From NCBI GenBank assembly GCA_950097015.1, contig CATNEN010000030.1, positions 1,798,001-1,862,000 of the forward strand: DNA of 64,000 bases. The letters are read 5' to 3'. Of this stretch, positions 1-64,000 are shown piece by piece. How positions within the stretch are numbered: the first letter of the stretch is position 1; each line of letters begins with the position of its first letter. The stretch comes from Macrostomum hystrix (lineage: Eukaryota; Animalia; Platyhelminthes). The position numbers were made by a program, and so were the translations under genes. The notes beneath the pieces are model-generated. The model was not told the DNA's origin. It made no database searches and was given only the letters and a program-made list of their open reading frames with translations.

Positions 1-176
1 CTAGACCTATGTAGTCACACCCAGAATACTCTAGACCTATGTAGTCACACCCAGAATACTCTAGACCTATGTAGTCACACCTAGAATACTCTAGACCTAT
101 GTAGACACACCTAGAATACTCTAGACCTATGTAGTCACACCTAGAATACTCTAGACCTATGTAGTCACACCTAGAA
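1..176. repeat. 30-bp tandem repeat (CTAGACCTATGTAGTCACACCYAGAATACT), about 6 copies, truncated by window start
   Basis: Unit recurs every 30 nt in the first three lines. Confidence 0.95.
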
Positions 177-240
177 TTATTTTGACCGATGCAGATCTTA
201 TGCGCATCGAACTTCGCTGCTCGAGCTCGAGCTCGTAGCT

Positions 241-338
241 CGCCAAAAAGAGTCCAGCAGCGAACGCAGCCCTCGAACATCTGTCTTACTCAGGAACCGC
301 TTGAGCAGCACCGGCTCACTTTTCTCTTCTCTTTCTCT
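241..338. repeat. About 100-bp dispersed repeat, copy 1 (copy 2 at 3702-3811)
   Basis: CGCCAAAAAGAGTCCAGCAGCGAACGCAGCCCTCGAACATCTGTCTTACTCAGGA...CCGCTTGAGCAGCACCGGCTC plus a CT-rich tail is present at both places in the same orientation. Confidence 0.9.
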
Positions 339-24835: not shown

Positions 24836-25384
24836 ACAAATATCAATTAGAAGCGAGTCCCTATCACGCAAGATACAGAAAAAAACGAAATAAATTTCGA
24901 GGTTTAAAATATTCTAGACGAAAACAAAACTGTGAGATTCGATTCACTCAATGAGCACAGAAAGCATTGGCAAACAATAATGTGCATTTAGTTGGCTACT
25001 ACTGACAAGTAGAACATGGCGGATGTGCAAGCAGCATTTCTCGTTAGGACATGCAAAAAAATACCAATGGAATGGCGCGGTTAGAGAGTGTAACTGTCAG
25101 CTTTGTTTAACAAGAAATAATAATACGAGCTAATATGATTCGTTTTCTAATTAGCAATCTGTTCTGCTGGGCAAAAATTGAATAGTTCAAATGTTAAGCT
25201 AGATGAACACAATGGCAAATTAGTGGTGCAAATATCTGATTTCAGAAATAAAAACTCAGCGACAGTGAATTAATACAGGCTTCAGAAGGCGAGATTTGAG
25301 CACTTGCTCAAGATGTAATATTAACTTGCGTGCGGCAGCCGCTTGCTTTCCTCGCAAGGCTTACCAAAAGCAGGGCAGAAGATT

Positions 25385-25945
25385 GAGATGGGAGATTGAC
25401 AGTGAGAAGATAGGGGATTGACGGTGAGAAGATGAGAGATTGACAGAGAGAAGATGGGAGATTGACAGTGAGAAGATGGGGGATTGACAGTGAGAAGATG
25501 GGGGATTGACAGAGAGAAGATGGGAGATTGACAGTGAGAAGATAGGGGATTGACGGTGAGAAGATGGGAGATTGACAGAGAGAAGATGGGAGATTGACAG
25601 AGAGAAGATGGGGGATCGACAGTGAGAAGATGGGGGATCGACAGTGAGAAGATGGGAGATTGACAGAGAGAAGATGGGGGATCGACAGTGAGAAGATGGG
25701 GGATTGACAGTGAGAAGATGGGGGATTGACAGAGAGAAGATGGGAGATTGACAGTGAGCAGATGGGAGATTGACAGTGAGAAGATGGGAGATTGACAGAG
25801 AGAAGATAGGAGATTGGCAGAGAGAAGATGGGAGATTGACAGAGAGAAGATGGGGGATCGACAGTGAGAAGATGGGGGATCGACAGTGAGAAGATGGGGG
25901 ATTGACAGTGAGAAGATGGGGGATTGACAGAGAGAAGATCGGAGA
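25385..25945. repeat. 22-bp purine-rich tandem repeat (GAGAAGATGGGRGATTGACAGW), just 3' of the VKR stop
   Basis: Direct periodicity. Explains ORFs 25308-26081, 25321-26004 and 25361-26008. Confidence 0.93.
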
Positions 25946-26053
25946 TTGTCGGAGAAAAGAACGAACGAAGAGAGAGTGAAAATGCTGGAGGAGGGCAAAG
26001 GCACCCATGAACGGAGCCTCCGCTAGAGAGAGCAGGCCCTGCGAAGGGCCGAT

Positions 26054-29000
26054 TCAAACCCGAGTGGTGGCCAGAAGGCATTGTGACTCGGGATCATTTA
26101 GCACGGGTGCCGGGGCGGGAGATATCAGAGCCGCGCCGACAACGCGCCCGCCACTGCCGCCGGCTCCGTCAGCTTCACCAACATTGACGTTCGGCGCGCT
26201 GTCGGCTTCGCTTTCGACACTGGCTGCAGCAGCGGCCGCCGCGGCTCTGCGCTGAAAGTCGATTCGAACGGCGCGCAGATCCGAGGCGCTGCGATGCCGC
26301 TGCACGGAGGAGCGCAGCCACTGAGGCACGGAGGTCAGGCTGAGGGCGTTTAGCTTCACGTTGCTAAGCGACCGAACAGCGGCCCAGGTGTCTGAGGCGC
26401 CAAGGTTGCCCTCGGCAACGCCGCCACCGATACTGCCTCCACCGGTGCCGCCGATTCCAGCTATGGCGGCTACGGTGGCTCTGTCACGGCCGAGCACCGG
26501 CTGCGTCGGCGGCGCATCATCCAGGCAGGCGGCCACGCACGGCGGCTGATCGCGCAGCTCGTGAAGCAGCTCGCTGACCAGGGGCCGGTCCTCCGGGGCG
26601 TAGCGCCAGCAGCGGGTGACCAGGTCGCGCAGCCGCGGGCAGGCGGCTTCGGGAAAGTTCGACAGCAGGGTGAAGCCCCTGCGGGTTGTTAGATTAGTCA
26701 AGTGGTTAGTGAATTAGCCGAGACCATCGATAATCTATTCGCGTGGATATATAATGTTTGGTCGTGAGAATAGCAGTTGAGAATAGCAGCTGAGAATAGC
26801 AGTTGAGAATAGCAGCTGAGAATAGCAGTTGAGAATAGCAGCTGAGAATAGCAGTTGAGAATAGCAGCTGAGAATAGCAGCTGAGAATAGCAGTTGAGTT
26901 GAGAATAGCAGCTGAGAATAGCAGCTGAGAATAGCAGCTGAGAATAGCAGCTGAGACTAGCAGTTGGGAATAGCAGCTGAGAATAGCAGCTGAGAATAGC
27001 AGCTGAGAATAGCAGCTGAGAATAGCAGCTGAGAATAGCAGCTGAGAATAGCAGCTGAGAATAGCAGCTGAGAATAGCATTTGAGAATAGCAGCTGAGAA
27101 TAGCAGTTGAGAATAGCAGCTGAGAATAGCAGCTGAGAATAGCAGCTGAGAATAGCAGCTGAGAATAGCAGCTGAGAATAGCATTTGAGAATAGCAGCTG
27201 AGAATAGCAGTTGAGAATAGCAGTTGAGAATAGCAGCTGAGAATAGCAGCTGAGAATAGCAGTTGAGAATAGCAGTTGAGAATAGCAGCTGAGAATAGCA
27301 GCTGAGAATAGCAGCTGAGAATAGCAGTTGAGAATAGCAACTAGAATTACCTGGCAACCTCGGCCATGACTCGCTGATGACTCCAGTCATAGAACGGGAA
27401 CTTTCCAAATGTGATCATTTCGTAGAGCAGCACTGCGAAGGCCCAGACGTCGCTCTTGACGCTGAAATAAGCGTACTGAATGGCTTCTGGGGGCATCCAA
27501 CGAACTGGTACAAAGTTGGGCGAATGCATTCGGTAATAGTTAGGCGCCGTTCTGGCCAATCCGAAGTCGCCTAGTTTCACAATATGGGATCCGTTGATCA
27601 GGCAGTTGCGGAGGGCCACGTCGCGGTGCAGCACCGGTGGATCCTGGGAATGCAGGTACTCCAGGCCGCTGGCTATGTCGATGGCATAGCGGGTCAGGTA
27701 CTCAGGACTGGTGGTGACGTCACCCCGATGAGTTCGGCGGGCCATGAGGAAGGATTTCAGGTCGCCATGGAGACAGAATTCCATCACTATGAAGTAGGGT
27801 TGGTCCATGGTGCAAACACCCAGCAGTTGAATGATGTTGGCGTGGTTCAGCTTGCACAGCACCTGACAGTGGGAAGCATTGGATAGGATGTTAACTCATA
27901 GGACAGAGCAGAGTAGATAGGACAGAGCAGAGTAGATAGGACAGAGCAGAGTAGATAGGACAGAGCAGAGTAGATAGGACAGAGCAGAGTAGATAGGACA
28001 GAGCAGAGTAGATAGGACAGAGCAGAGTAGATAGGACAGAGCAGAGTAGATAGGACAGAGCAGAGTAGATAGGACAGAGCAGAGTAGATAGGACAGAGCA
28101 GAGTAGATAGGACAGAGCAGAGTAGATAGGACAGAGCAGAGTAGATAGGACAGAGCAGAGTAGATAGGACAGAGCAGAGTAGAGAGTGGGTGGCGCAGAG
28201 GAGAGAGCGGATGGCACAGAGGAGAGAGCGGATGGCACAGAGGAGAGAGCGGATGGCACAGAGGAGAGAGCGGATGGCACAGAGGAGAGAGCGGATGGCA
28301 CAGAGGAGAGAGCGGATGGCACAGAGGAGATAGTAGATATGACAGAAAAAAACGGAGAAGTTAAAGCTGGCAATTGCCAGTTTTGCAAAGCAAGTTAAGC
28401 TCACCTCGGCCTCCTCCATAAACTTGAGCACAGCCTCTGGTTTAGAGTTCTCTGTGAGCACTTTGACAGCGCATGACTCCCAGCGTTTGTCACTGAGTTT
28501 AATCTCTCCGCCGAACACTGTACCAAAGCAGCCCTCGCCAACCATCCTGTTAATAATGATTGATAATTTAGACACCTCCATATGAGCTAGTCTGTCGCGC
28601 ATCTCCCTAAACGGCTGGTTGAGTCGGTCGCGCACCCTGATGCGGTAATAGTGCAGGGCGCCAATGAACAGGCAGGCTGTGACAGTTAGCACGGCCAGCA
28701 GCAGGCACAGTAGGAATGCTGTGAGTGTCTCATTGCAGCTCCAGTTGGGATTCAGGGCGCGCATGAAGGCTGTGTTGCAGGCTGGGTGCAGCAGCCGGAT
28801 GAAGGCCCCGTCCTCTGTCCAGTAGTCTTTAGGCGGCAGCAGAGGACCGGACTCGACGCTAACCAGCAGCTTGCTTTTGTTAATTGACCAGCGATAGGTG
28901 GCCAGGTTCTTGCTGACATAGGTGTAGTTTGAGCCGCCCAGGCCAGCTGTTTTCCAAAAACAGATTTGGGAATTGACATAATGATAAAGAGAATTTTTCT

Positions 29001-32000
29001 AGATTGCATGTGTTGATAGACTAGGGGGTTACAGACTAGTGGTTATTGCGTCGGACTCATGACTTGAAGGTCGGGAGTTCGATTCCACTGGAACAATATG
29101 TGTCCTTTAGCAAAACACTTAAATCTGTGTTGCTCTAGTTCACTTAACTGTCAAATTGGTACCAGCATTAGCTGGGGTAATTGAGGGTGGGTGTGGCGCA
29201 CCTTCAGTTCATGGACTGAACAGCCGTACGCAGCTTTCAGGTGCGCTGCGCAATAGCTGCGCTTTTGGCTGCCAGGTCGGGTCCGATTGGGGCAGGTGTA
29301 ATCAGTGATAATAATTAATAGTGGAAAATAATAGAAAAGTCCTAAGCCACAAGTGTGACCGGGATAAACTTGTATAATTGGGATAACTGAGCTAACTGGG
29401 ATAAGTAGGATAACTGGGATAGATATGATACATGGGGTAAATAGGACAACTGGGATAAATAGGACAACTGGGATAAATAGGACAACTGGGATAAATAGGA
29501 CAACTGGGATAAATAGGCCAACTGGGATAAATAGGACAACTGGGATAAATAGGACAACTGGGATAAATAGGACAACTGGGATAAATAGGACAACTTGGAT
29601 AAAATAGGTCAACTGGGATAAAAGGATAACTGGGATAAATAGGATAACTGGCATTAATAGGGCAAATGGGGTAAATAGGATAACTGGGATAAATAGGACA
29701 AGTTTCTCTCACCACTCCGCCGCTGCAGTCCGCGCAGCCAGATGGCCAAGAAGCCGGAGCCCGGCTCGTGACTGTCGCCAAAGCGGAAGCCGTCAAACTC
29801 GGTGGCAGCCAGAATTCGGCGATATTCTCGAACAACTCGGCCAGATTTCAAATGATGCAGAGCGGCGGAATCGTTTGAGTGCAGCCGGCCGAGGGCGTTG
29901 GCCAGTAGGTAAACAGCGTCGCTGGTGTAGGGCCCGAAGTAGTTCTCGGTGAAGCTGGCACCAGGGCTGGAGCCGGACTCAGCTGCTGAGCTGGCTGTAT
30001 GGCCCAGCCGCGATTTGTAAGATTTGAGCCGGTCGGCTGGTAGAAACCCCTGGACGGTTTGATCGATGTGCGATAGCAATCCAATGACAATGAACCCAAT
30101 GCTGAGAAATTCGAATATTGAGTTCTTAAATAGTCAGTATTGAGTCCTTAAATACTCAATGCCTTTCGGATACTCAATTTTGAGTCATTTGATACTCAAT
30201 GTTGAGTCCCTGGATACTCAATACTGAGTCCTTGGATTTTCAATACTGAGTCCTTGATATACTTAATGCTGAGTCCTTGGATACTCAATACTGAGTCCTT
30301 GGATACTTAATACTGAGGCCTTGGATACTCAATACTGAGGCCTTGGATACTTAATACTGAGGCCTTGGATACTCAATACTTGAGGCCTTGGATACTTAAT
30401 ACTTGAGGCCTTGGATACTTAATGTTGAGTCCCTGGATACTCAATACTGAGTCCTTGGATTTTCAATACTGAGTCCTTGGATTCTCAATGCTGAGTCCTT
30501 GGATACTCAATAATGAGTCCTTGGATACTCAATGCTGAGTCCTTGGATACTCAATAATGAGTGCTTGGATTCTCAATGTTGTGTTTGGCTACTCAATGTG
30601 GTGAATCAATTCTGAATCCTTGTTTTGAGTCCACACTGCAGCGACTCACCTTGATAACTAAATGCCCGTTGCTGGCCTCAGTAACCTGGCTGTCGGTGCA
30701 GCCCCCCGGCACGTGAATGCCAGTGCCAGAGCAGTTGGCGCCCCGCTCAGTGAAGATGTCCTTGACCCAATGGGCCAGAATGAACTGGTAGTTGTTTCTA
30801 GGAAACATGCCCAGTTGGTAGGCGGCGCACATGTACAGACAGGTGCCACGGCGGAAATAGTCCATGGCAAAGAGCTGGCAGGAGCCCTCTTTGGCCCGAC
30901 GCAGCGAGTCTATGGCCTGGTGCAGAGTCAGATCCCGCTCGGCTAGAAACTCGTTGTGACAAACTCGCATCATCTGGTCCTGTGGTGGGGTGTAGTTTGA
31001 GGAGAACTGCAATAAGCCTGGAGACAGGGGGGTCAGTGGCAGAGCGGTCTAACGCGAGGCCGCATTCATTTGGGGCGCCAGCCGCGGAGAGAAGGCTTGG
31101 GGGCTTGTCGTGCAATTCACGCCCTTGAGAGCCAACCTCCAAGGCACAGAGAGTGTACACTGCCTGACGATGAGAAAGTCAGGGCAGATGTACACACCTG
31201 TGTGAGTGTGCCTGCATACAGTAGTCTGTGTGCATGTGAGCTCAGGAGTCAGCGAAATGGGCAGAATTGCCTCCTCGCTGGCACCGGGTCTAGTATCACC
31301 AAATGATGTGCCACTGCCCGCAGCCCTCCTGCAAACATTAGCAATATTATTAAGCATAGAATAGACATAGAATGAAATTATTCTGAAGGCTAGAGATACA
31401 GAATTTAAAAGTTATGACATCAGCTCAGTTCATAATCAATTTGGACTTCTGACAAGGAGGTCGGGAGTTCGAATCTCAGCACAAAGGGTACTCAAGCCAC
31501 ACAGTTAATTCCCTAGTGCTTCAGTTCACCTAGCTTCAGGGTACCAGTGTCAGCCTATTCTTGTCCATAAGCAAGTTTTTTTTGAGAAAAAATCTTGTCT
31601 ATAGATACCCTTCATGAAGTATTCAGATAATTTATTATCGTGAAGTGTTTAAATATTACTAAATGAATATTTATTTATTACGCCTGCTCCAATAAGTCAA
31701 GATATGCATCTGAAGGCTGCGTTCGACTGTTCAGTCCAATGACTGTGGTCTTGTGCGCCACACCCACCCTCAATTACCCCAGCTAATGCTGATAGCCCAT
31801 TTAACCAGCTGGGTGAACTGAAGCAATGCAGAGTTCAATTGTTCCAGTGGAGTCGGGAATCGAACCCCCGACCCTCAAGTCCTGAGTCCGACACTCTAAC
31901 CACTAGGCTAACACGCCCTAACCATCCTTTAATATGCCCATTTTAATTTCATGTAAATTTTATTAGTTAAACTGACCGTAAAGTGCTGGCTATCCAGAAA

Positions 32001-35000
32001 GAGCTTCTTATTAGTGAGCAGTCCCAGCTGGTACCAGTTGTTAGCAACTAGAAACTGACTGACAGCGCCAGCGTAGGCAACGTAGCTGGGTATAGTTCGA
32101 TAGAAATTGGGATAAATATCCTGCCTAGCGAACACTGGCGACTCAACAGTCGAGGCCACAATCATGGTGCCAAGGCGGGTGCTGGCCTGCGCCACAGATT
32201 CCACAGTTTTCGAGCAGGTGCCGGCGATAAGGCCAACCAGCGGGTCGTAGGGCGCCGCCGAGTAGCCGTTGCTATTATTGTAAGGGTCGGCCTCTTCAAC
32301 TTCGCCAGCGTAGCCGTAGCCGGAGCCGCGCCGGCAGCCAACATCCGAGCAGTGAAGGCGCATGTAGAAATCCAATACGGCTCGGTTTGAGCAGTCCAGG
32401 CCACGAGGCAGCAGCTGCAGGCGATAATTATCTACTAGCAGTGAGCAGAACTCGGGTCGGTCAGGTCCAGCAGAGCAGTTGTAAGAGTTGATGATCTGCA
32501 CGGAGACGTTGGCAAATTCCAGCACCTGGGGATCGTCGAATAGGAAACCGCGCGGCCAGATTAGGCCAATCCGCAGCTGGCTGGGCCGAGCAGCGAGGCG
32601 GGGCGGCAACTTGGGCAGCTGTTCAATCAGCCAGCTGCAGGCATTGTACTTGTTGTCATGGTAACGAGCGATATCAGGCATTGGCAGCCAGCGCAGATAG
32701 TCGGCCAGGTCCGGGTCTCTGAAAATGTACGACATTTTTTTTCGTAAAATTTTTTTACTGCGCGAGTAACAATGACAACTGAGTAACGCGTCTGAGTCTC
32801 ACACCAAGGTCCCTGAGCTCGATTCCACGGCGAGGCCACATTCGTTTAGGGCGCAGGCGCGGAGAGAAAGCTTTGGGGCCAGAGAGTGTACACTGCCTGA
32901 CGATGAGAAAGTCAGGGCAGATGTACACACCTGTGTGCGTGCGTGTGTGCTCAGGAGTCAGCGGAATGGGCAGAATTGCCTCCTCGCTGGCTGCGGGTCT
33001 ACTATAACCAAATGATGTGCCATTGCCCGCAGCCCTCCTGCAATAAAAATGCATCATTATTACCAATAAGCACAATATGGAAGATTCCAAAAGCCTCACC
33101 TCCGTGCCAGACTGTGCAGTATTAAACGCAAGCTTAGTAAAATGCTTGGGCGCCACGTGCATGTAGCTGTGGACGCCGCCATCAGGGCTCAGTGAGGCCA
33201 GCTCAGACAAGTTGCGCACACTGATGCAGTTGCGAGACATTGTGACTAGCGCAGCAGTAGATGACACATTCACTGAACGCGACTGTGGCGAATAGCAGTA
33301 CCTGCGACAATAGGGGTTAGGTGATCCTATAGACTAGACAGAGGTGGAATGAGTGGACAGATGAGGAATGAGTGGACAGATGAGGAATGAGTGGACAGAG
33401 AAGGAATGAGTGGACACTGAGGAGGAATGAGTGGACAGATGAGGAATGAGTGGAAAGATGAGGAATGAGTGGACAGATGAGGAATGAGTGGACAGAGGAC
33501 TCAGTGGACAGAGGAGGAATGAGTGGACAGAGGAGGACTCAGTGGACAGGGGAGGACTCAGTGGACAGAGGAGGACTCAGTGGACAGAGGAGGAATGAGT
33601 GGACAGAGGAGGAATGAGTGGACAGAGAAATGAGTGGACAGATGAGGAATGAGTGGACAGAGGAGGACTCAGTGGACAGAGGAGGACTCAGTGGACAGAG
33701 GAGGAATGAGTGGACAGAGGAGGAATGAGTGGACAGATGAGGAATGAGTGGACAGAGGAGGACTCAGTGGACAGAGGAGGACTCAATGGACAGAGGAGGA
33801 CTCAGTGGACAGAGGAGGACTCAATGGACAGAGGAGGACTCAGTGGACAGAGGAGGACTCAATGGACAGAGGAGGACTCAGTGGACAGAGGACTCAATGG
33901 ACAGAGGAGGACTCAGTGGACAGAGGAGGACTCAGTGGACAGAGGAGGACTCAGTGGACAGATGAGGAATGAGTGGACAGATGAGGAATGAGTGGACAGA
34001 GGAGGAATGAGTGGACAGATGAGGAATGAGTGGACAGAGGAGGAATGAGTGGACAGAGGAGGAATGAGTGGACAGAGGAGGAATGAGTGGACAGAGAAAT
34101 GAGTGGACAGAGGAGGAATGAGTGGACAGAGAAATGAGTGGACAGAGGAGGAATGAGTGGACAGAGGAGGAATGAGTGGACAGAGAAATGAGTGGACAGA
34201 GGAGGAATGAGTGGACAGAGAAATGAGTGGACAGAGGAGGACTCAGTGGACAGAGGAGGACTAAATGGACAGAGGAGGGGACCGTGAAATGAGACAGATG
34301 AGACAATGGACTCACAGCTGAGCATCCCTGTACACGAATCCCAGATGAGCAAACGGGTATCCCGAGGAGTGAGGCAGGTCGAGTCGCACTGGACAGCGGT
34401 AGGGCCAGTGTTGGCACTGAGCCGGCTCGTAGATTTTCACATTTTCATAGCGGAACACGTGACGCAGAAGCAGGGCCACAACTTGTGCCGGGAACGGGTC
34501 AGCAGGATCGGCTCCGACAGCCAGCAGGTTAGGCGACTCGTCGGCGCTCGAATTGAAGTAGTAGCGGACTCGCGGGGAGGCATCTGGGCTCATTTTAGTA
34601 TTGATTCATAAGATATTTTTGATATGATAGTAACACGCGTTTAAGCTACTGTTTGTAAGTAGTATAGTAAATTAACATAGCTTTTTATGCAAAAAATAGT
34701 TTTATATGTTTACAGGGCATCATGGATAGGACTGGGTGAGACTTCTCGGCGTTTCTTGCCAAATAAAAATTTTGATTTAAAAAATTGATTACACCTGTCC
34801 CTATAGGGTCGATGTCCAGCACAAAGCACAGCAGCAGCTGTTACGCGGCGCATCTGAAGGCTGCGTACGGCTTTTCAGTCCATGGACCAGGAGGACGACA
34901 CACCCACCTCAATTATCTAAGCTCTAATGCTGGCTAGAACACCCATTGAATAGCTGGGTAAAATGAAGCGATGCAGAGTTAATTGCTTTGGTAAAGGACA

Positions 35001-35789
35001 CAAATTGTTGCAGTGGAGTCAAGAATTGAACCCCCGACCTTCAAGTCGTGAGTCCGACGCTCTAACCACAAGGCTACAACCTCCTGGTCGAATGGATCGA
35101 CCAGCTACTGATTTCAGTTGGTTCGGTTCGAGGATCGAGCTCGGGTCTCCATTCTAGAGCCTTATGTTGACATCCACTTTAAGTTAAAGGCTTTAACATT
35201 CACAAAAATTGTGAAAGCAATCAGATTTATAGAAATTACAGCTGTAATTAGTTGGGTTAGGTGAACAGCCAGCAGCTGCATACAAATTTCAAGTCCAAGC
35301 CTTGTCCAAGTAGACACCATTTGTTTCCCTTTTCACTGAGATTCGAACTTCAGACCTTCTGGTGAGGAGTCCAAAACTCTCTTATAAGGATTAAGAACAA
35401 AAACTAAATATGAATATGACCGTGAAGTACAGACGTCAATGAGAACGACCTTGGGAATCACCCAGGCGTTTCCAATGCATAAACACAGATATGCTGCTAT
35501 TGGCCCAGAACTGTCACGTGATAGACAGCTCCTACAGTCGCGACAAGGACGTGAACTCGCATCCAGAATTAAATTTGGAAAAATATGGCACTGACCAAAA
35601 ACACAGAAAAATATCTACTAAGTGCTTAGAAGCAGTGAATAATTTGAATTTAAACTTACAGAATGCAAGTCCATTAGTTAGCTTAGTAAAATCGCAGGCT
35701 GGAATCTCCACATCAGCATTGACAGTTCTTAGGAGATGTAGACCACATAGAGTTAAGCAGAGGCATAATTGTGTCTTTGTCACAATCAT
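26054..35789 (-). CDS. VKR: Venus kinase receptor-type RTK: (signal peptide) - solute-binding-like N-domain - Venus flytrap (ANF/GABA-B-like) - TM - tyrosine kinase; about 1240 aa
   Basis: Inferred exons in transcription order: 35789-35660 (putative), 34583-34316, 33301-33100, 32718-31977, 31006-30650, 30049-29713 (start uncertain), 28946-28405, 27862-27351, 26678-26054. Phases match at every junction except 33100/32718. VFT motifs LRIGLIWP, GLIAGTCSKTVESVAQAS, SPVFARQDIYPNFYRTIP, YTSDAVYLLANAL. TM AFLLCLLLAVLTVTACLFIGAL. Kinase GEGCFG, AVK, HRDVALRN, DFGLAR, NYYR, PVRWMPPE, KSDVWAF. Confidence 0.85.
26765..27340. repeat. 13-bp tandem repeat (GAGAATAGCAGCT), about 44 copies, last VKR intron
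   Basis: Direct periodicity. Fills the intron between the last two kinase exons. Confidence 0.96.
27895..28330. repeat. Two abutting arrays in a VKR intron: 19-bp (AGTAGATAGGACAGAGCAG, 27895-28185) and 21-bp (GAGGAGAGAGCGGATGGCACA, 28195-28330)
   Basis: Direct periodicity. Confidence 0.93.
29021..29305 (+). mobile_element. tRNA-derived SINE family 1 (CORE-like central domain), full-length copy
   Basis: tRNA-like head (TAGTGGTTA..GCGTCGGACTCATGACTTGAAGGTCGGGAGTTCGATTCC), CORE-like TGTGTCCTTTAGCAAAACACTTAA..., and an end CAGGTGTAATCA plus A/T tail. Homologous copies at 31420-31560, 31700-31920 and 34786-35085. Confidence 0.8.
29370..29700. repeat. 18-bp tandem repeat (ATAGGACAACTGGGATAA), VKR intron
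   Basis: Direct periodicity. Confidence 0.93.
30110..30580. repeat. 22-bp tandem repeat (TACTGAGTCCTTGGATACTCAA), VKR intron
   Basis: Direct periodicity, degenerate at the edges. Confidence 0.92.
31025..31335 (+). mobile_element. tRNA-derived SINE family 2, copy 1
   Basis: Partial A-box head (TCAGTGGCAGAGCGGTCTAACGCG). Body is homologous to 32830-33045 (shared GAGAGTGTACACTGCCTGACGATGAGAAAGTCAGGGCAGATGTACACACCTGTGTG...TGCCCGCAGCCCTCCTGCA). Confidence 0.7.
31420..31560 (+). mobile_element. SINE family 1, degenerate 5' portion
   Basis: GGAGGTCGGGAGTTCGAATCTC B-box followed by degenerate core (GCTTCAGTTCACCTAGCT...GGGTACCAG). Confidence 0.6.
31700..31920 (-). mobile_element. SINE family 1, inverted copy
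   Basis: Reverse complement shares a perfect 39-nt block (CAGCATTAGCTGGGGTAATTGAGGGTGGGTGTGGCGCAC) and the tRNA-like head with 29021-29305. Confidence 0.82.
32765..33050 (+). mobile_element. tRNA-derived SINE family 2, copy 2
   Basis: tRNA-like head (AACTGAGTAACGCGTCTGAGTCTCACACCAAGGTCCCTGAGCTCGATTCCACGGCGAGGCCA), body as in copy 1, ending in an A-rich tail. Confidence 0.75.
33340..34280. repeat. About 21-bp purine-rich tandem repeat (GAGGAATGAGTGGACAGAGGA / GAGGACTCAGTGGACAGAGGA), VKR intron
   Basis: Direct periodicity with two interspersed variant blocks. Confidence 0.93.
34786..35085 (-). mobile_element. SINE family 1, inverted full-length copy
   Basis: Reverse complement matches the head (TTGAAGGTCGGGGGTTCAATTC), core and CAGGTGTAATCA end of 29021-29305. 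Confidence 0.8.
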
Positions 35790-36571
35790 ATTAGATATTG
35801 TAGATGAAAGATACTTTTTTCGATGGATATCTTAGCTAATGGCTCCTGGAAATAAATGTGTAAAAAAATACAGCTTTTATCTTTCCCTTCCTCGATAGGG
35901 TTAGTACATATGCAGTACATAGGGCACAGTTCGATTAGATATACAGGTTACTAAGAGATCTGAATAGGCATCAGATAAAGTCTTATTTCAAAAATTATCT
36001 TTATATTAGTTGAAAAGTTATATATGTCATGACTTAAAAGCTTAAAATATATCAATCTGAGAATTTTTACAGAAGTTCAACTATTCATTTTATATATATT
36101 TTTAGTCAATCTTTATATTGTAGTTAGAGTTTCTTGTTACTATGACAATAAACACTTAGCATGACTCATCTCACATTTAAAAGCCAGACTTGATTTTTTT
36201 CTTATAAGACCTTCACCATACCTAAAATGTTCAAATATCAATACACATGTCTGTATTTCAAATCTTTCCTATATATCCAGAAATATATACGTTTCCCTTG
36301 CCTTCCCATTATATCCTGTAGCTTCCTATACTGTCTCTCAAATCATATGATTCACTCACATACTTAATAGCTATTTATTAAATTACTCAAGTTACTTAAT
36401 ACTTAATTGCATACCCACTTTATATCTCTCTCTCCTGTGTAGTGGTTTTGTCTGTAAAAAATGTTCTGCCTATAATACCAAACACTAATTGCATAAATCT
36501 TTTGTTCAATTAAGATTGAGTACATGCTCAATTTTTGCTAGAACATAGTACATTCTCATCATGTACAGGTC

Positions 36572-62000: not shown

Positions 62001-63187
62001 CACCATCCCCAATTCAGCTATCCCACACCATCCCCAATTCAGCTATCCCACACCATCCCCAATCCAGCTATCCCAGACCATCCCTAATCCTCCAGCTATC
62101 CCACACCATCCCTAATCCTCCAGCTATCCCACACCATCCCTAATCCTCCAGCTATCCCACACCATCCCTAATCCTCCAGCTATCCCACACCATCCCTAAT
62201 CCTCCAGCTATCCCACACCATCCCTAATCCTCCAGCTATCCCACACCATCCCTAATCCTCCAGCTATCCCACACCATCCCTAATCCTCCAGCTATCCCAG
62301 ACCATCCCTAATCCTCCAGCTATCCCACACCATCCCTAATCCTCCAGCTATCCCACACCATCCCTAATCTTACAGCTATCCCAGAGGACCCAGACCATCC
62401 CTAATCCTCCAGCTATCCCACACCATCCCTAATCCTCCAGCTATCCCACACCATCCCTAATCTTACAGCTATCCCAGAGGACCCAGACCATCCCTAATCC
62501 TCCAGCTATCCCACACCATCCCTAATCTTACAGCTATCCCAGAGGACCCAGACCATCCCTAATCCTCCAGCTATCCCATACCATCCCCAATCCAGCTATC
62601 CCACACCATCCCCAACCCAGCTATCCCACAACATCCCCAACCCAGCTATCCCACACCATCCCCAACCCAGCTATCCCACAACATCCCCAACCCAGCTATC
62701 CCACACCATCCCCAACCCAGCTATCCCACAACATCCCCAACCCAGCTATCCCACACCATCCCCAACCCAGCTATCCCACACCATCCCCAAACCAGCTTTC
62801 CCACACCATCCCCAATCCTCCCGAATCCCCACTCCCCAGGTGACTGGACTATCAAATCTGCACACCTTGGAGCTGTCAAGAAACCGCCTGACGACGATAC
62901 CTTTGGGCCTGCCGGCGCAGCTGACTCAGCTGTTTCTGAGCGGCAACCGGATTCAGCTGGTGCCCGAAGGCAGCTTTCTCAGCCTGACTCACCTGACCCG
63001 GCTGGACCTGTCGCGCAATTATTTGACCTCAGTCAGCGGCGCTTTCAACTTTGCCTGCCGAGCTCCGTCCCTGACTGAACTGGTGCTGGACCTGGCCGAA
63101 CTGGAAGTGATGAAGCGCAGAGGCCGCTTCAACGCGCCGCCGCCCGATATTCCAGCCGGTTCATCGATGGGGAAGAAAAGAAAAAAG
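59077..63187 (+). CDS. Extracellular leucine-rich-repeat protein (signal peptide, Ser/Gly/Ala repeat spacer, LRRNT, many LRRs); 3' end not resolved
   Basis: Exon 59077-60373 (one-base frame break near 60218), exon 60941-61066, and exon 62840 to about 63187, with phase-0 GT-AG junctions. LRRNT CRL...LDCRKSGLDKVP. LRRs LDLSGCAI, LEHLDLTGNEL, LQDLVLAQNRL, LHSLNLAANDI, LHTLILSGN, LHTLELSRNRL, LTQLFLSGNRI, LTRLDLSRNYL. Confidence 0.82.
59215..59544 (+). repeat. Coding 33-bp tandem repeat, 10 copies, encoding GAPSDASGAKS
   Basis: In frame between the signal peptide and LRRNT of the LRR gene. Confidence 0.95.
60400..60915. repeat. 21-bp tandem repeat (GGGTGTGACATCTAAGGGATT), LRR intron 1
   Basis: Direct periodicity. 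Confidence 0.93.
61105..62825. repeat. 25/28-bp C-rich tandem repeat (CAGCTATCCCACACCATCCCCAATC[CTC]), LRR intron 2
   Basis: Direct periodicity over 1.7 kb. Confidence 0.95.
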
Positions 63188-63354
63188 GTGAGCTTCAATC
63201 GAGAGCATGGGAGCATCGAAGCAATGTGGAAAGTGGAATTTAAGTAGCGAAAACTGACAAGCTTGAAAGGATTCGAAGCTCGAAGATTGAAATTTCTCAC
63301 GAGTTGAATTAAAAAACCGGGATTTTTTAGGCGGGACTTCCACAGCTTGGTGAT

Positions 63355-64000
63355 CCGAGGCGAGTTTGGGATCTGTGGAAGTTGGGTATTTGGTGCAAAT
63401 TTGGGATCTGATTCGAATTGGGGATCTGGGGCGAGTTTGGGATCTGGGCCGAGTTTGGGATCTGATTCGAATTGGGGATCTGGGGCGAGTTTGGGATCTG
63501 GGGCGAGTTTGGGATCTGGGGCGAGTTTGTGATCTGGGGCAAGTTTGGGATCTGATTCGAATTGGGGATCTGGGGCGAGTTTGGGATCTGCGGCGAGTTT
63601 GGGATCTGATTCGAATTGGGGATCTGGGGCGAGTTGGGGATCTGATTCGAATTGGGGATCTGGGGCGAGTTGGTGATCTGATTCGAATTGTGGATCTGGG
63701 GCGAGTTGGGGATCTGATTCGAATTGTGGATCTGGGGCGACTTGGGGATCTGATTCGAATTGAGGATCTGGGGCGAGTTTGTGATCTGCGGCGAGTTTGG
63801 GATCTGATTCGAATTGGGTATCTGGGGCGAGTTGGTGATCTGATTCGAATTGTGGATCTGGGGCGAGTTTGGGATCTGGGGCGAGTTTGTGATCTGGGGC
63901 AAGTTTGGGATCTGATTCGAATTGGGGATCTGGGGCGAGTTGGGGATCTGATTCGAATTGGGGATCTGGGGCGAGTTGGGGATCTGATTCGAATTGGGGA
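63355..64000. repeat. G-rich 18/24-bp composite tandem repeat (GGGATCTGGGGCGAGTTT / GGGATCTGATTCGAATTG), runs off the window
   Basis: Direct periodicity. Confidence 0.93.

What the first reader, a model, noticed from the sequence alone, without database searches (positions are those of the whole stretch)
26054..35789. Venus kinase receptor apparently carrying a second, different solute-binding domain in front of its flytrap
Seen: a tyrosine kinase with an insulin/Trk-like YY activation loop joined through one TM to a GABA-B/ANF-type Venus flytrap. Established: this VFT plus TK architecture defines VKRs, first described in Schistosoma and found only in invertebrates. Upstream of the VFT start (QLRIGLIWP) are about 200 further extracellular residues including FPAQVVALLLRHVFRYENVKIY and LADYLRWLPMPDI...YNACSWLIEQ. 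Inference: by eye these resemble the N- and C-terminal signatures of type II periplasmic binding proteins of the glycine-betaine OpuAC/ProX kind, in shortened form. A two-sensor RTK could integrate an osmolyte or amine signal with an amino-acid signal. This is the strongest candidate for an undescribed system in the window.
Basis: partly seen in the sequence, partly recalled or inferred. Interest (0 to 1): 0.8.

Follow-up and report, generated by a model that had tools for sequence, protein, structure and literature searches.

The report
Flatworm Venus kinase receptor, vestigial betaine-binder domain
This is a transcribed flatworm Venus kinase receptor whose first ~220 residues look like a cut-down remnant of a betaine/choline-type bacterial binding-protein domain, a domain that insect, crab and fluke versions of this receptor carry in full and that the receptor literature I could search never mentions.

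Summary
A minus-strand gene (stop 26054, ATG 35789) encodes signal peptide, ~220 extra extracellular residues, a GABA-B-like Venus flytrap, one TM and a tyrosine kinase. Spliced contigs from four public runs join the upstream exons to the flytrap exon at GT-AG sites.

The closest proteins are Macrostomum lignano VKR paralogues (76% identity), so the window comes from a related flatworm.

VKRs of Drosophila, Glossina, a beetle, a midge, a crab and a trematode carry a ~350-residue domain at the same position. A D. mojavensis model (pLDDT 80) matches only OpuAC/ProX/ChoX/TmoX binding proteins (Foldseek E to 9e-11; Z 17.7-11, next family ~8). Two invariant Trp align with aromatic-box Trp of TmoX, one also with a ProX Trp.

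The Macrostomum domain aligns only with the two ends of that domain (hhalign E 2.6e-5 and 3e-3, collinear). It lacks the ~140-residue middle and both Trp; its own model is poor (pLDDT 55).

The two-domain architecture is family-wide, not special to this gene. I found no description of it. The scan noted another VKR elsewhere in this genome.

The parts
35660..35857 (-). Exon A: 5' UTR, ATG at 35789 (in-frame stop at 35832-35834 upstream), signal-peptide-like leader, first Cys of the N-domain
   Evidence: RNA contigs cover 35660-35857 and are joined to 34583. Translation. Donor GT directly after 35660.
34316..34583 (-). Exon B: N-terminal beta-alpha-beta unit of the vestigial OpuAC-like domain (RVRYYFNSS ... 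FPAQVVALLLRHVFRY ... VKIY, then a Cys pair and RLDLP)
   Evidence: Spliced contigs. 78% identical to M. lignano P0001. hhalign against long VKR N-domains gives E 2.6e-5. No Pfam, PDB or Atlas hit on its own.
33100..33301 (-). The window has an extra base at 33130-33132 and an extra GGC at about 33180 relative to the RNA.
   Evidence: (pieces 33100-33299/33301; 'left out' rows at 33130/33132 and 33180). Orthologue P0001 reads TKLRLILHSLARKDPDL.
32577..32718 (-). First part of exon D: C-terminal helices of the vestigial domain (DPDLADYLRWL ... NACSWLIEQL) with the Cys that is invariant in all VKR N-domains aligned
   Evidence: hhalign C-terminal hit E 3e-3.
31977..32576 (-). Rest of exon D: start of the Venus flytrap (QLRIGLIWP strand, lobe 1, GTCSKT...YPNFYRTIPS)
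   Evidence: Pfam ANF_receptor. GABA-B2 in PDB. Spliced contigs.
30650..30979 (-). Exon E: flytrap, continued
   Evidence: Joined to exon D in X2 record 7 and X4 record 17. 82% identical to P0001.
29711..30058 (-). Exon F (limits approximate): flytrap lobe 2 / C-terminal part
   Evidence: tblastn of P0001. Weak ANF_receptor hit. Splice context. Not covered by the reads call.
28405..28953 (-). Exon G (limits approximate): juxtamembrane ectodomain, single TM segment, start of the kinase (GEGCFGTV, CAVKVL)
27350..27889 (-). Exon H (limits approximate): kinase core (HRDVALRN, GDFGLAR, NYYR activation loop, PVRWMPPE)
   Evidence: Pfam PK_Tyr_Ser-Thr E 1.2e-54. 84% identical to P0001.
26054..26680 (-). 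Exon I (start approximate): end of the kinase and C-terminal tail, stop TGA at 26054-26056

Best explanation
The window carries a complete, expressed Venus kinase receptor gene of a Macrostomum-like flatworm. The order is signal peptide, about 220 extra residues, class I (GABA-B-like) Venus flytrap, one TM helix, and an insulin-receptor-like tyrosine kinase with a YY activation loop.

The extra residues are most likely a vestige of a class II periplasmic-binding-protein domain of the OpuAC/ProX/ChoX/TmoX kind (glycine betaine, choline, TMAO binders). VKRs of insects, a crab and a trematode carry that domain in full, about 350 residues, at the same place.

In Macrostomum the N-terminal beta-alpha-beta unit, a strand region with a conserved Cys, and the C-terminal helices survive. 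The middle ~140 residues do not. I infer that this middle is the second lobe, together with the two conserved Trp that align with the ligand cage of TmoX.

Shown:
- the exon joins;
- the VKR identity;
- the OpuAC-like fold of the long form, as a prediction;
- the collinear end-to-end alignment of short and long forms;
- the loss of the middle and of both Trp.

Inferred:
- The remnant no longer closes on a small ligand.
- It acts as a disulfide-stabilised structural module on top of the flytrap, perhaps for spacing, dimer contact or partner binding.
- Signalling runs, as in other VKRs, from flytrap closure on an amino-acid-like ligand to kinase autophosphorylation.
For: Gene and transcript:
- Spliced contigs of four runs join exons A to E at GT-AG sites.
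- M. lignano P0001 (1194 aa) aligns collinearly to nine blocks from 35789 to 26057.
- Pfam finds ANF_receptor and PK_Tyr_Ser-Thr. GABA-B2 is the best solved relative.

Long form:
- About 340-380 residues lie between the leader and the IGGIFP flytrap strand in Drosophila, Glossina, Agrilus, Polypedilum, Petrolisthes, Dicrocoelium and a transcript contig, P0015.
- The AF2 model of D. mojavensis residues 33-384 has pLDDT 80.2 and pTM 0.73.
- In Foldseek against PDB, 44 of the first 45 rows, and all 27 best, are OpuAC/ProX/ChoX/TmoX/DmpX/EgtU-family proteins or sensors built on them; E runs from 9e-11, prob 1.0.
- VIA-align gives Z 17.7-11.1 for 46 entries of that family, with 232-281 residues aligned over whole chains. 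The next family is at Z about 8.
- The nearest ESM Atlas clusters carry PF04069.
- The profile of 14 N-domains hits TmoX 4xz6 at E 0.042. There 'LEvW' lies on Trp102 and 'LhWvP' on Trp222. Both are aromatic-box residues according to PMC8918994.
- hhalign against E. coli ProX gives E 0.019, with the same Trp aligned.

Short form:
- MAFFT places it on both ends of the long form, with one Cys pair invariant in all 14 sequences.
- hhalign of short against long profiles gives E 2.6e-5 (N-terminal end) and 3e-3 (C-terminal end), in order.
- Exon B is as conserved between species (78%) as the flytrap and kinase exons.
- 38 positions, including 5 Cys, are invariant among three M. lignano paralogue groups (four sequences).
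Against: - The short form itself has no significant hit in Pfam, in PDB sequences, in ESM Atlas features, or in Foldseek.
- Its AF2 model is poor: pLDDT 55, and below 50 for residues 71-150.
- In the wide VIA search, OpuAC-family chains are among the top rows, but only at Z 3-4, below any useful threshold. That model was built with long-form sequences in its alignment, so it is not independent evidence.
- hhalign probabilities are modest (75% and 10%).
- 'Lobe 2 lost' rests on alignment gaps plus the general topology of this fold, not on coordinates.
- The long-form fold is a prediction from 14 sequences.
- No Pfam PF04069 hit for any VKR.
- The join of exons E to I rests on the orthologue, not on reads.
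Confidence: 0.72

Rival explanations
1. One reading: in this gene the N-terminal region is a working second solute sensor. It would be a shortened OpuAC-like domain binding an osmolyte or amine, so that the receptor integrates two small-molecule signals.
For: The region is homologous to a binding-protein domain. It is under constraint: 78% identity in exon B and conserved Cys. It is extracellular, with a leader and NxS/T sites.
Against: The ~140 residues missing relative to long-form VKRs include the conserved GRFxWFV and hWxPS motifs. The LEVW Trp is replaced (RLDLP here; A in the paralogues). So both Trp that align with the TmoX cage are gone. A class II binding protein traps its ligand between two lobes, which is established knowledge for this fold. 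No pocket-forming fold was recovered.
Confidence: 0.08
2. The N-terminal region is a lineage-specific cysteine-containing leader with no common origin with binding proteins. The likeness to the ends of the long VKR N-domain, and to OpuAC, would be chance plus a generic beta-alpha-beta pattern.
For: No database hit for the short form alone. Identity to long forms is low, 17-19%. The C-terminal hhalign hit has a probability of only 10%.
Against: Two separate local profile hits lie in the right order and at the right ends: E 2.6e-5 and 3e-3, each for a single comparison. The position is the same, between leader and flytrap, in proteins that are clearly homologous over the rest of their length. 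A Cys pair and the C-x-W motif are shared by all 14 sequences. A trematode, also a flatworm, still has the long form.
Confidence: 0.17
3. The upstream exons belong to another transcript or are not coding, and the true receptor starts at the flytrap exon.
For: None after testing. The runs are not recorded as RNA.
Against: Contigs from four samples skip the introns exactly at GT-AG sites and keep one open frame from the ATG at 35789 into the flytrap. The M. lignano gene models contain the same segments in the same order.
Confidence: 0.02

Closest known systems
Venus kinase receptors (SmVKR1/2, AmVKR, AaVKR; Ahier 2009 PMC2680970, Vanderstraete 2013 PMC3703292)
   Same: A GABA-B/ANF-type flytrap, a single TM and an insulin-receptor-like tyrosine kinase with YY, on one transcript. 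Invertebrate. A flatworm family with several paralogues.
   Different: The papers I could read describe only flytrap, TM and kinase. Here, and in every other VKR sequence examined, a further domain precedes the flytrap. In Macrostomum that domain is cut down to about 220 residues.
OpuAC/ProX/ChoX/TmoX/DmpX/EgtU substrate-binding proteins (Pfam PF04069, class II periplasmic binding proteins for quaternary ammonium and sulfonium compounds)
   Same: The long VKR N-domain model superposes on them over their whole length, Z up to 17.7. Two invariant Trp align with cage Trp of TmoX, and one of them with a ProX Trp. The C-terminal W...W helix is shared.
   Different: No PF04069 HMM hit. Identity is 7-15%. 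The VKR domain is about 60-90 residues longer, with insertions and extra Cys. It is fused to a receptor kinase in an animal. The window's version keeps only the two ends and neither Trp.
Ionotropic glutamate receptors (amino-terminal domain of class I plus ligand-binding domain of class II)
   Same: An animal receptor with two different periplasmic-binding-protein-type domains in tandem in its ectodomain. This comparison is from general knowledge.
   Different: The order is reversed (class II first in VKRs), the class II subfamily differs (OpuAC-like, not LAOBP/GlnH-like), and the output is a kinase rather than a channel. Not tested here.
Lactococcal OpuA and protist OpuAC fusions
   Same: An OpuAC domain covalently fused to a membrane protein: 7ahd and 3l6g are among the best structural matches. 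The nearest Atlas cluster is a haptophyte cluster whose members carry OpuAC (25%) and bestrophin (20%).
   Different: Those are transporters or channels, not receptor kinases, and they keep both lobes.

Membership tests
Venus kinase receptor (VKR) | Extracellular Venus flytrap of the ANF/GABA-B type | tested here: met
   PF01094 at E 6.5e-6 in exon D, and 6.5e-15 in orthologue P0001. GABA-B2 is the best PDB sequence match.
Venus kinase receptor (VKR) | Single transmembrane segment between flytrap and kinase | tested here: met
   One hydrophobic run of about 25 residues in 27850-28998, read directly. It is conserved in P0001. No TM predictor was available.
Venus kinase receptor (VKR) | Intracellular tyrosine kinase with catalytic motifs and a YY autophosphorylation site | tested here: met
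   PF07714 at E 1.2e-54. GxGxxG, VAIK-like CAVK, HRD, DFG and NYYR are read.
Venus kinase receptor (VKR) | All domains on one transcript | tested here: inconclusive
   Contigs join exons A to E. Exons F to I are tied in only by collinearity with P0001. In another organism one ORF on a transcript-like contig (P0015, L001) holds N-domain, flytrap and kinase.
OpuAC/ProX-type class II binding protein (PF04069) | Significant match to the family's sequence model | tested here: not met
   No Pfam hit at E up to 10 for the window exons or for any VKR N-domain. Only marginal profile hits for the long form: TmoX E 0.042 and ProX E 0.019.
OpuAC/ProX-type class II binding protein (PF04069) | Two alpha/beta lobes joined by a two-strand hinge (whole fold) | tested here: not met
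   For the window's kind: the middle ~140 residues are absent, the model has pLDDT 55, and there is no fold match. For long-form VKRs the feature is met in a predicted model.
OpuAC/ProX-type class II binding protein (PF04069) | Aromatic cage for a quaternary ammonium or sulfonium group | tested here: not met
   Window: the position of the LEVW Trp is P (RLDLP), and the hWxP segment is deleted. Long forms: two of the four TmoX box Trp are matched by invariant Trp. The other two positions were not resolved.
OpuAC/ProX-type class II binding protein (PF04069) | Binds betaine, choline or a related solute | not testable with these tools
   Needs binding assays.

The most novel reading that the evidence does not exclude
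VKRs as a family are two-binding-domain receptors. An OpuAC/ProX-like class II domain, with at least part of an aromatic cage, sits in front of the class I flytrap in arthropods and trematodes. It binds a quaternary ammonium-type compound, or serves as the docking site for the peptide hormones that need a VKR. Macrostomum documents its secondary decay into a single-lobe stub. This would revise a receptor family described for twenty years as flytrap-TM-kinase, and would give a new ligand class to test on insect-vector and schistosome VKRs.
Probability: 0.25. Interest if true: 0.85.

Novelty: new variant of a known kind. Interest (0 to 1): 0.6.

Why it matters
VKRs control reproduction in schistosomes, mosquitoes and locusts, and they are discussed as drug and vector-control targets (PMC4038586, PMC5601475, PMC4522560). 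Their natural ligands remain unclear.

If the ectodomain holds a second binding-protein domain of the betaine/choline family, ligand screens and deletion constructs based on the flytrap alone have looked at only part of the sensor.

The flatworm gene in this window adds a natural experiment. The lineage kept the receptor, and multiplied it, while reducing that domain to a stub. This suggests which parts are needed for structure and which for sensing.

For the window gene itself the result is more modest: an ordinary, expressed VKR with a vestigial N-terminal module.

Tried and rejected
- Pfam, PDB sequence search and ESM Atlas features on exon B alone gave nothing.
- BLASTP of exon B against exon D shows no internal duplication.
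- Word search with the P0001 N-region found only M. lignano copies.
- Word search with a five-sequence full-length alignment was swamped by unrelated kinases and did not even return its own members. It is useless for a survey of VKRs.
- Pfam on six N-domains at E up to 10 gave no family. phmmer of the D. mojavensis N-domain against PDB gave none.
- The fold of the Macrostomum N-domain was low confidence. Foldseek rows on it are meaningless, E above 0.2. The wide VIA search reached at most Z 4. Atlas features for P0001 residues 45-257 gave no usable hit.
- Literature: no paper holds both 'venus kinase receptor' and 'glycine betaine'. The only paper with 'AlphaFold' is unrelated. Two broader searches returned unrelated papers.
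- I considered and dropped the idea that the N-region is an extra copy of flytrap lobe 1. The VKR literature describes only flytrap, TM and kinase, and the long-form model matches class II, not class I, proteins.
- The organism of the P0015 transcript (DRR639838) could not be named.
- The joined spliced protein of the window gene was not sent to any tool. The orthologue P0001 served as its stand-in for the fold.
Full report
1. What is in the window

The minus strand between 26054 and 35857 carries a multi-exon gene. Pfam finds ANF_receptor in 31932-32798 (E 6.5e-6), with a weaker piece in 29657-30133. It finds PK_Tyr_Ser-Thr in 27350-27895 (E 1.2e-54), with flanking pieces in 27850-28998 and 26057-26713. 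The best solved relatives of the flytrap exon are GABA-B2 ectodomains, E 3e-4. A single hydrophobic segment, the GxGxxG, HRD and DFG motifs and an NYYR activation loop can be read directly. So the Venus-flytrap plus TM plus tyrosine-kinase architecture is real.

2. Are the upstream exons part of it?

The look-up of sequencing runs returned four runs of one study. They are not recorded as RNA, are about 47 million letters each, and hold 0.32-0.38 of the sampled words.

Laid on 30600-36500, their contigs cover only exon-sized blocks at depth 5-9. They skip the intervals between blocks: 35857..35660 | 34583..34314 | 33299..33100 | 32718..31976 | 30978..30649. One 1421-nt contig (X3, record 15) spans the first four blocks. 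X2 record 7 and X4 record 17 join the fourth to the fifth. The skipped intervals begin with GT and end with AG on the minus strand, once 1-2-base alignment ambiguities are resolved. I infer that these are RNA assemblies and that the joins are splice junctions.

The frame runs from the ATG at 35789 into the flytrap. There is an in-frame stop at 35832-35834, and the leader looks like a signal peptide.

In that exon all four assemblies lack one base at 33130-33132 and one GGC at about 33180 relative to the window. Two synonymous RNA variants, CTG and TTG, stand where the window has CTTG. With the base removed, the exon ends TKLRLILHSLAR and joins exon D in frame. The M. lignano orthologue reads the same way. 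The frameshift is therefore most likely an assembly error at a heterozygous site.

About 245 residues precede QLRIGLIWP, about 25 of them leader.

3. Whose gene is it?

I ran an exhaustive HMMER search with exon D, by reference. It was justified because the length filter of the word search cannot see full-length receptors from an exon query. It found 18 proteins.

The best are Macrostomum lignano proteins:
- P0001: 1194 aa, 76% identical.
- Paralogues P0031/P0132 (48-51%), P0022 (32%) and P0005/P0028.

P0001 aligns collinearly to eight blocks from 34578 to 26057, at 49-84% identity. Its leader region corresponds to exon A. The window therefore comes from a related flatworm. The databases name these proteins 'guanylate cyclase' or 'hypothetical'. 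All the M. lignano paralogue groups recovered carry the same short N-terminal region. In the alignment of three of those groups (four sequences), 38 positions, including five Cys, are invariant.

4. The unexpected part: other VKRs have a long domain at the same place

The same search also returned:
- a trematode VKR (Dicrocoelium, P0012/P0120);
- crab VKRs (Petrolisthes, P0014/P0121);
- Drosophila mojavensis and D. navojoa VKRs (P0125/P0127);
- a transcript-like contig, P0015.

In each, 340-380 residues separate the leader from the flytrap's first strand, IGGIFP. A region-restricted word search added Drosophila hydei, montana, grimshawi, sulfurigaster, willistoni and busckii, plus Glossina, Agrilus and Polypedilum. 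None has a Pfam domain recorded or found there.

An alignment of eleven long forms has these invariant positions (D. mojavensis 33-384 numbering): H32, E90, W92 (in NLEVW), H136, W238 (in hWxP), C330, W332 and W343.

5. What the long domain is

AlphaFold2 on D. mojavensis residues 33-384, with a 14-sequence alignment, gave mean pLDDT 80.2 and pTM 0.73.

- Foldseek against PDB: 123 matches with E at or below 0.001. Of the first 45 rows, 44 (and all 27 best) are glycine-betaine, choline, TMAO, DMSP or ergothioneine binding proteins, or biosensors built on one (ChoX 2reg, DmpX 7yle, ProX 3tmg and 1r9l, OpuAC 3l6g, TmoX 4xz6, EgtU, OpuBC, YehZ). E runs from 9e-11, at probability 1.0, over about 340 alignment columns.
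- VIA-align: Z 17.7 to 11.1 for 46 entries of that family, with 232-281 residues aligned and the whole target chain spanned (for example E. coli ProX 1..308). It then drops to Z about 8 for MetQ-type proteins.
- The nearest ESM Atlas clusters carry PF04069 OpuAC. One is a eukaryotic (haptophyte) cluster in which some members also carry bestrophin.

At sequence level the signal is weak but consistent:
- The 14-sequence profile hits TmoX 4xz6_A at E 0.042. 'LEvW' falls on TmoX LELEVW (Trp102) and 'LhWvPs' on FNWTPN (Phe220, Trp222).
- PMC8918994 lists Trp55, Trp102, Trp177 and Trp222 as the TMAO aromatic box of that protein.
- hhalign of the long-form profile against E. coli ProX, fetched from the annotated K-12 record, gives E 0.019 over 113 columns. 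The same Trp lies on the ProX YYTWTPYW Trp, and the C-terminal W...W helix is aligned.

I conclude that long-form VKRs carry an OpuAC/ProX-type class II binding-protein domain in front of the class I flytrap. At least two cage positions are conserved as Trp. Whether it binds a small 'onium' compound is inference.

6. What the window's version is

MAFFT places the Macrostomum region, and the window's exons B, C and D given as separate rows, on the two ends of the long domain.
- The first strand, helix and strand (LAVG... FPAQ..LLRHVFRY ..V.I) lie on IGLQVTNRSTHQ..IFLKEVLNY.DVQII.
- The last strand and helices (Y.HV, KL.L..LA, DPDL..YL, ACxWL) lie on the C-terminal part.
- One Cys pair is invariant in all 14 sequences.
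- About 140 middle residues are absent, including GRFxWFV and hWxPS.
- The LEVW Trp position is P in the window and in P0001, and A in the other paralogues.

Profile-profile comparison of short against long forms gives two collinear local hits: E 2.6e-5 (50 columns, probability 75%) and E 3e-3 (54 columns, probability 10%).

In proteins of this fold the first lobe is built from the N- and C-terminal parts of the chain and the second lobe from the middle. That is established topology, not measured here. On that basis the remnant corresponds roughly to lobe 1.

Its own AF2 model is poor: pLDDT 55, and only the two ends reach 62-79. Foldseek finds nothing. The wide VIA search gives at most Z 4. 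DmpX, TmoX, EgtU and ProX are among the first six rows and span both termini. This is below significance, and it is not independent, because long forms were in the alignment used for the model.

Exon B is 78% identical between the window and M. lignano, which is as conserved as the flytrap and kinase exons. Exon C is only 49% identical. So the stub is under constraint, but it has lost what a class II binding protein needs to trap a ligand.

7. Mechanism

Most likely (0.72): this is a VKR that signals as described for the family, by flytrap closure on an amino-acid-type ligand, dimer rearrangement and YY autophosphorylation (PMC2680970, PMC3703292). Its N-terminal stub is a disulfide-stabilised structural module left over from an ancestral OpuAC-like domain.

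It stays open, and is attractive, for long-form VKRs. A chance resemblance without common origin keeps about 0.17.

8. Novelty

The VKR papers I could search describe only flytrap, TM and kinase. They contain no mention of an N-terminal domain. No paper in the library combines VKR with glycine betaine, or meaningfully with AlphaFold.

I cannot exclude that structure-based databases such as Gene3D, ECOD or AlphaFold DB already flag it, or that a subscription paper does.

For the window gene the class is 'new variant of a known kind'. The more interesting claim is the family-wide one.

9. Limits and rules followed

Exons were searched by reference, and the orthologue P0001 stood in for the fold.
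- Exons F to I are placed by tblastn and visible splice sites only.

Noticed in passing
window 33100-33301 (33130-33132 and about 33180): The assembly has one extra base (CTTG where the RNA assemblies have CTG or TTG) and one extra GGC codon relative to all four RNA assemblies. The extra base shifts the frame of a real exon, so an automatic annotation of this assembly would break or truncate the gene.
   Followed up: partly
window 30994-31387, 31782-31978, 32767-33160, 34737-35130: Intronic interspersed repeats with summed contig depth in the thousands in all four runs. The copies at 31837-31919 and 35003-35085 (86% alike) contain a GTTCGATTCC-type box on the other strand and look like tRNA-derived SINEs. 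The pairs 31147-31334 and 32880-33043 are a second element (88-89% alike).
   Followed up: partly
window 33290-34250; also 25311-26050, 26700-27340, 27900-28390, 29345-29610: The introns and the 3' flank are filled with short-period tandem repeats. The one between exons B and C has a 19-nt period and about 50 copies. These repeats create long spurious ORFs in several frames.
   Followed up: partly
P0001, P0031/P0132, P0022, P0005/P0028 (Macrostomum lignano): M. lignano has at least four VKR paralogue groups, several in near-identical copies, all with the short N-region (P0028's is shorter still). UniRef names them 'guanylate cyclase'. The scan also noted another VKR on another piece of this genome (s1-319827).
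   Followed up: partly
ESM Atlas cluster (row 1): The structure nearest to the long VKR N-domain represents a haptophyte protein cluster (868-aa representative) in which members carry OpuAC (25%) and bestrophin (20%) domains. This suggests that eukaryotic fusions of OpuAC-type domains to membrane proteins occur outside animals.
   Followed up: no
L001 1001-4132 (Logan DRR639838 contig): A single uninterrupted 1043-codon ORF encodes a long-form N-domain, flytrap, TM and kinase in an unnamed organism. Its flytrap motifs resemble the trematode ones.
   Followed up: no
window 62840-64000: Another first-stage note reports a Toll-like LRR-TM-TIR-like gene running over the window's end. I did not examine it.
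   Followed up: no
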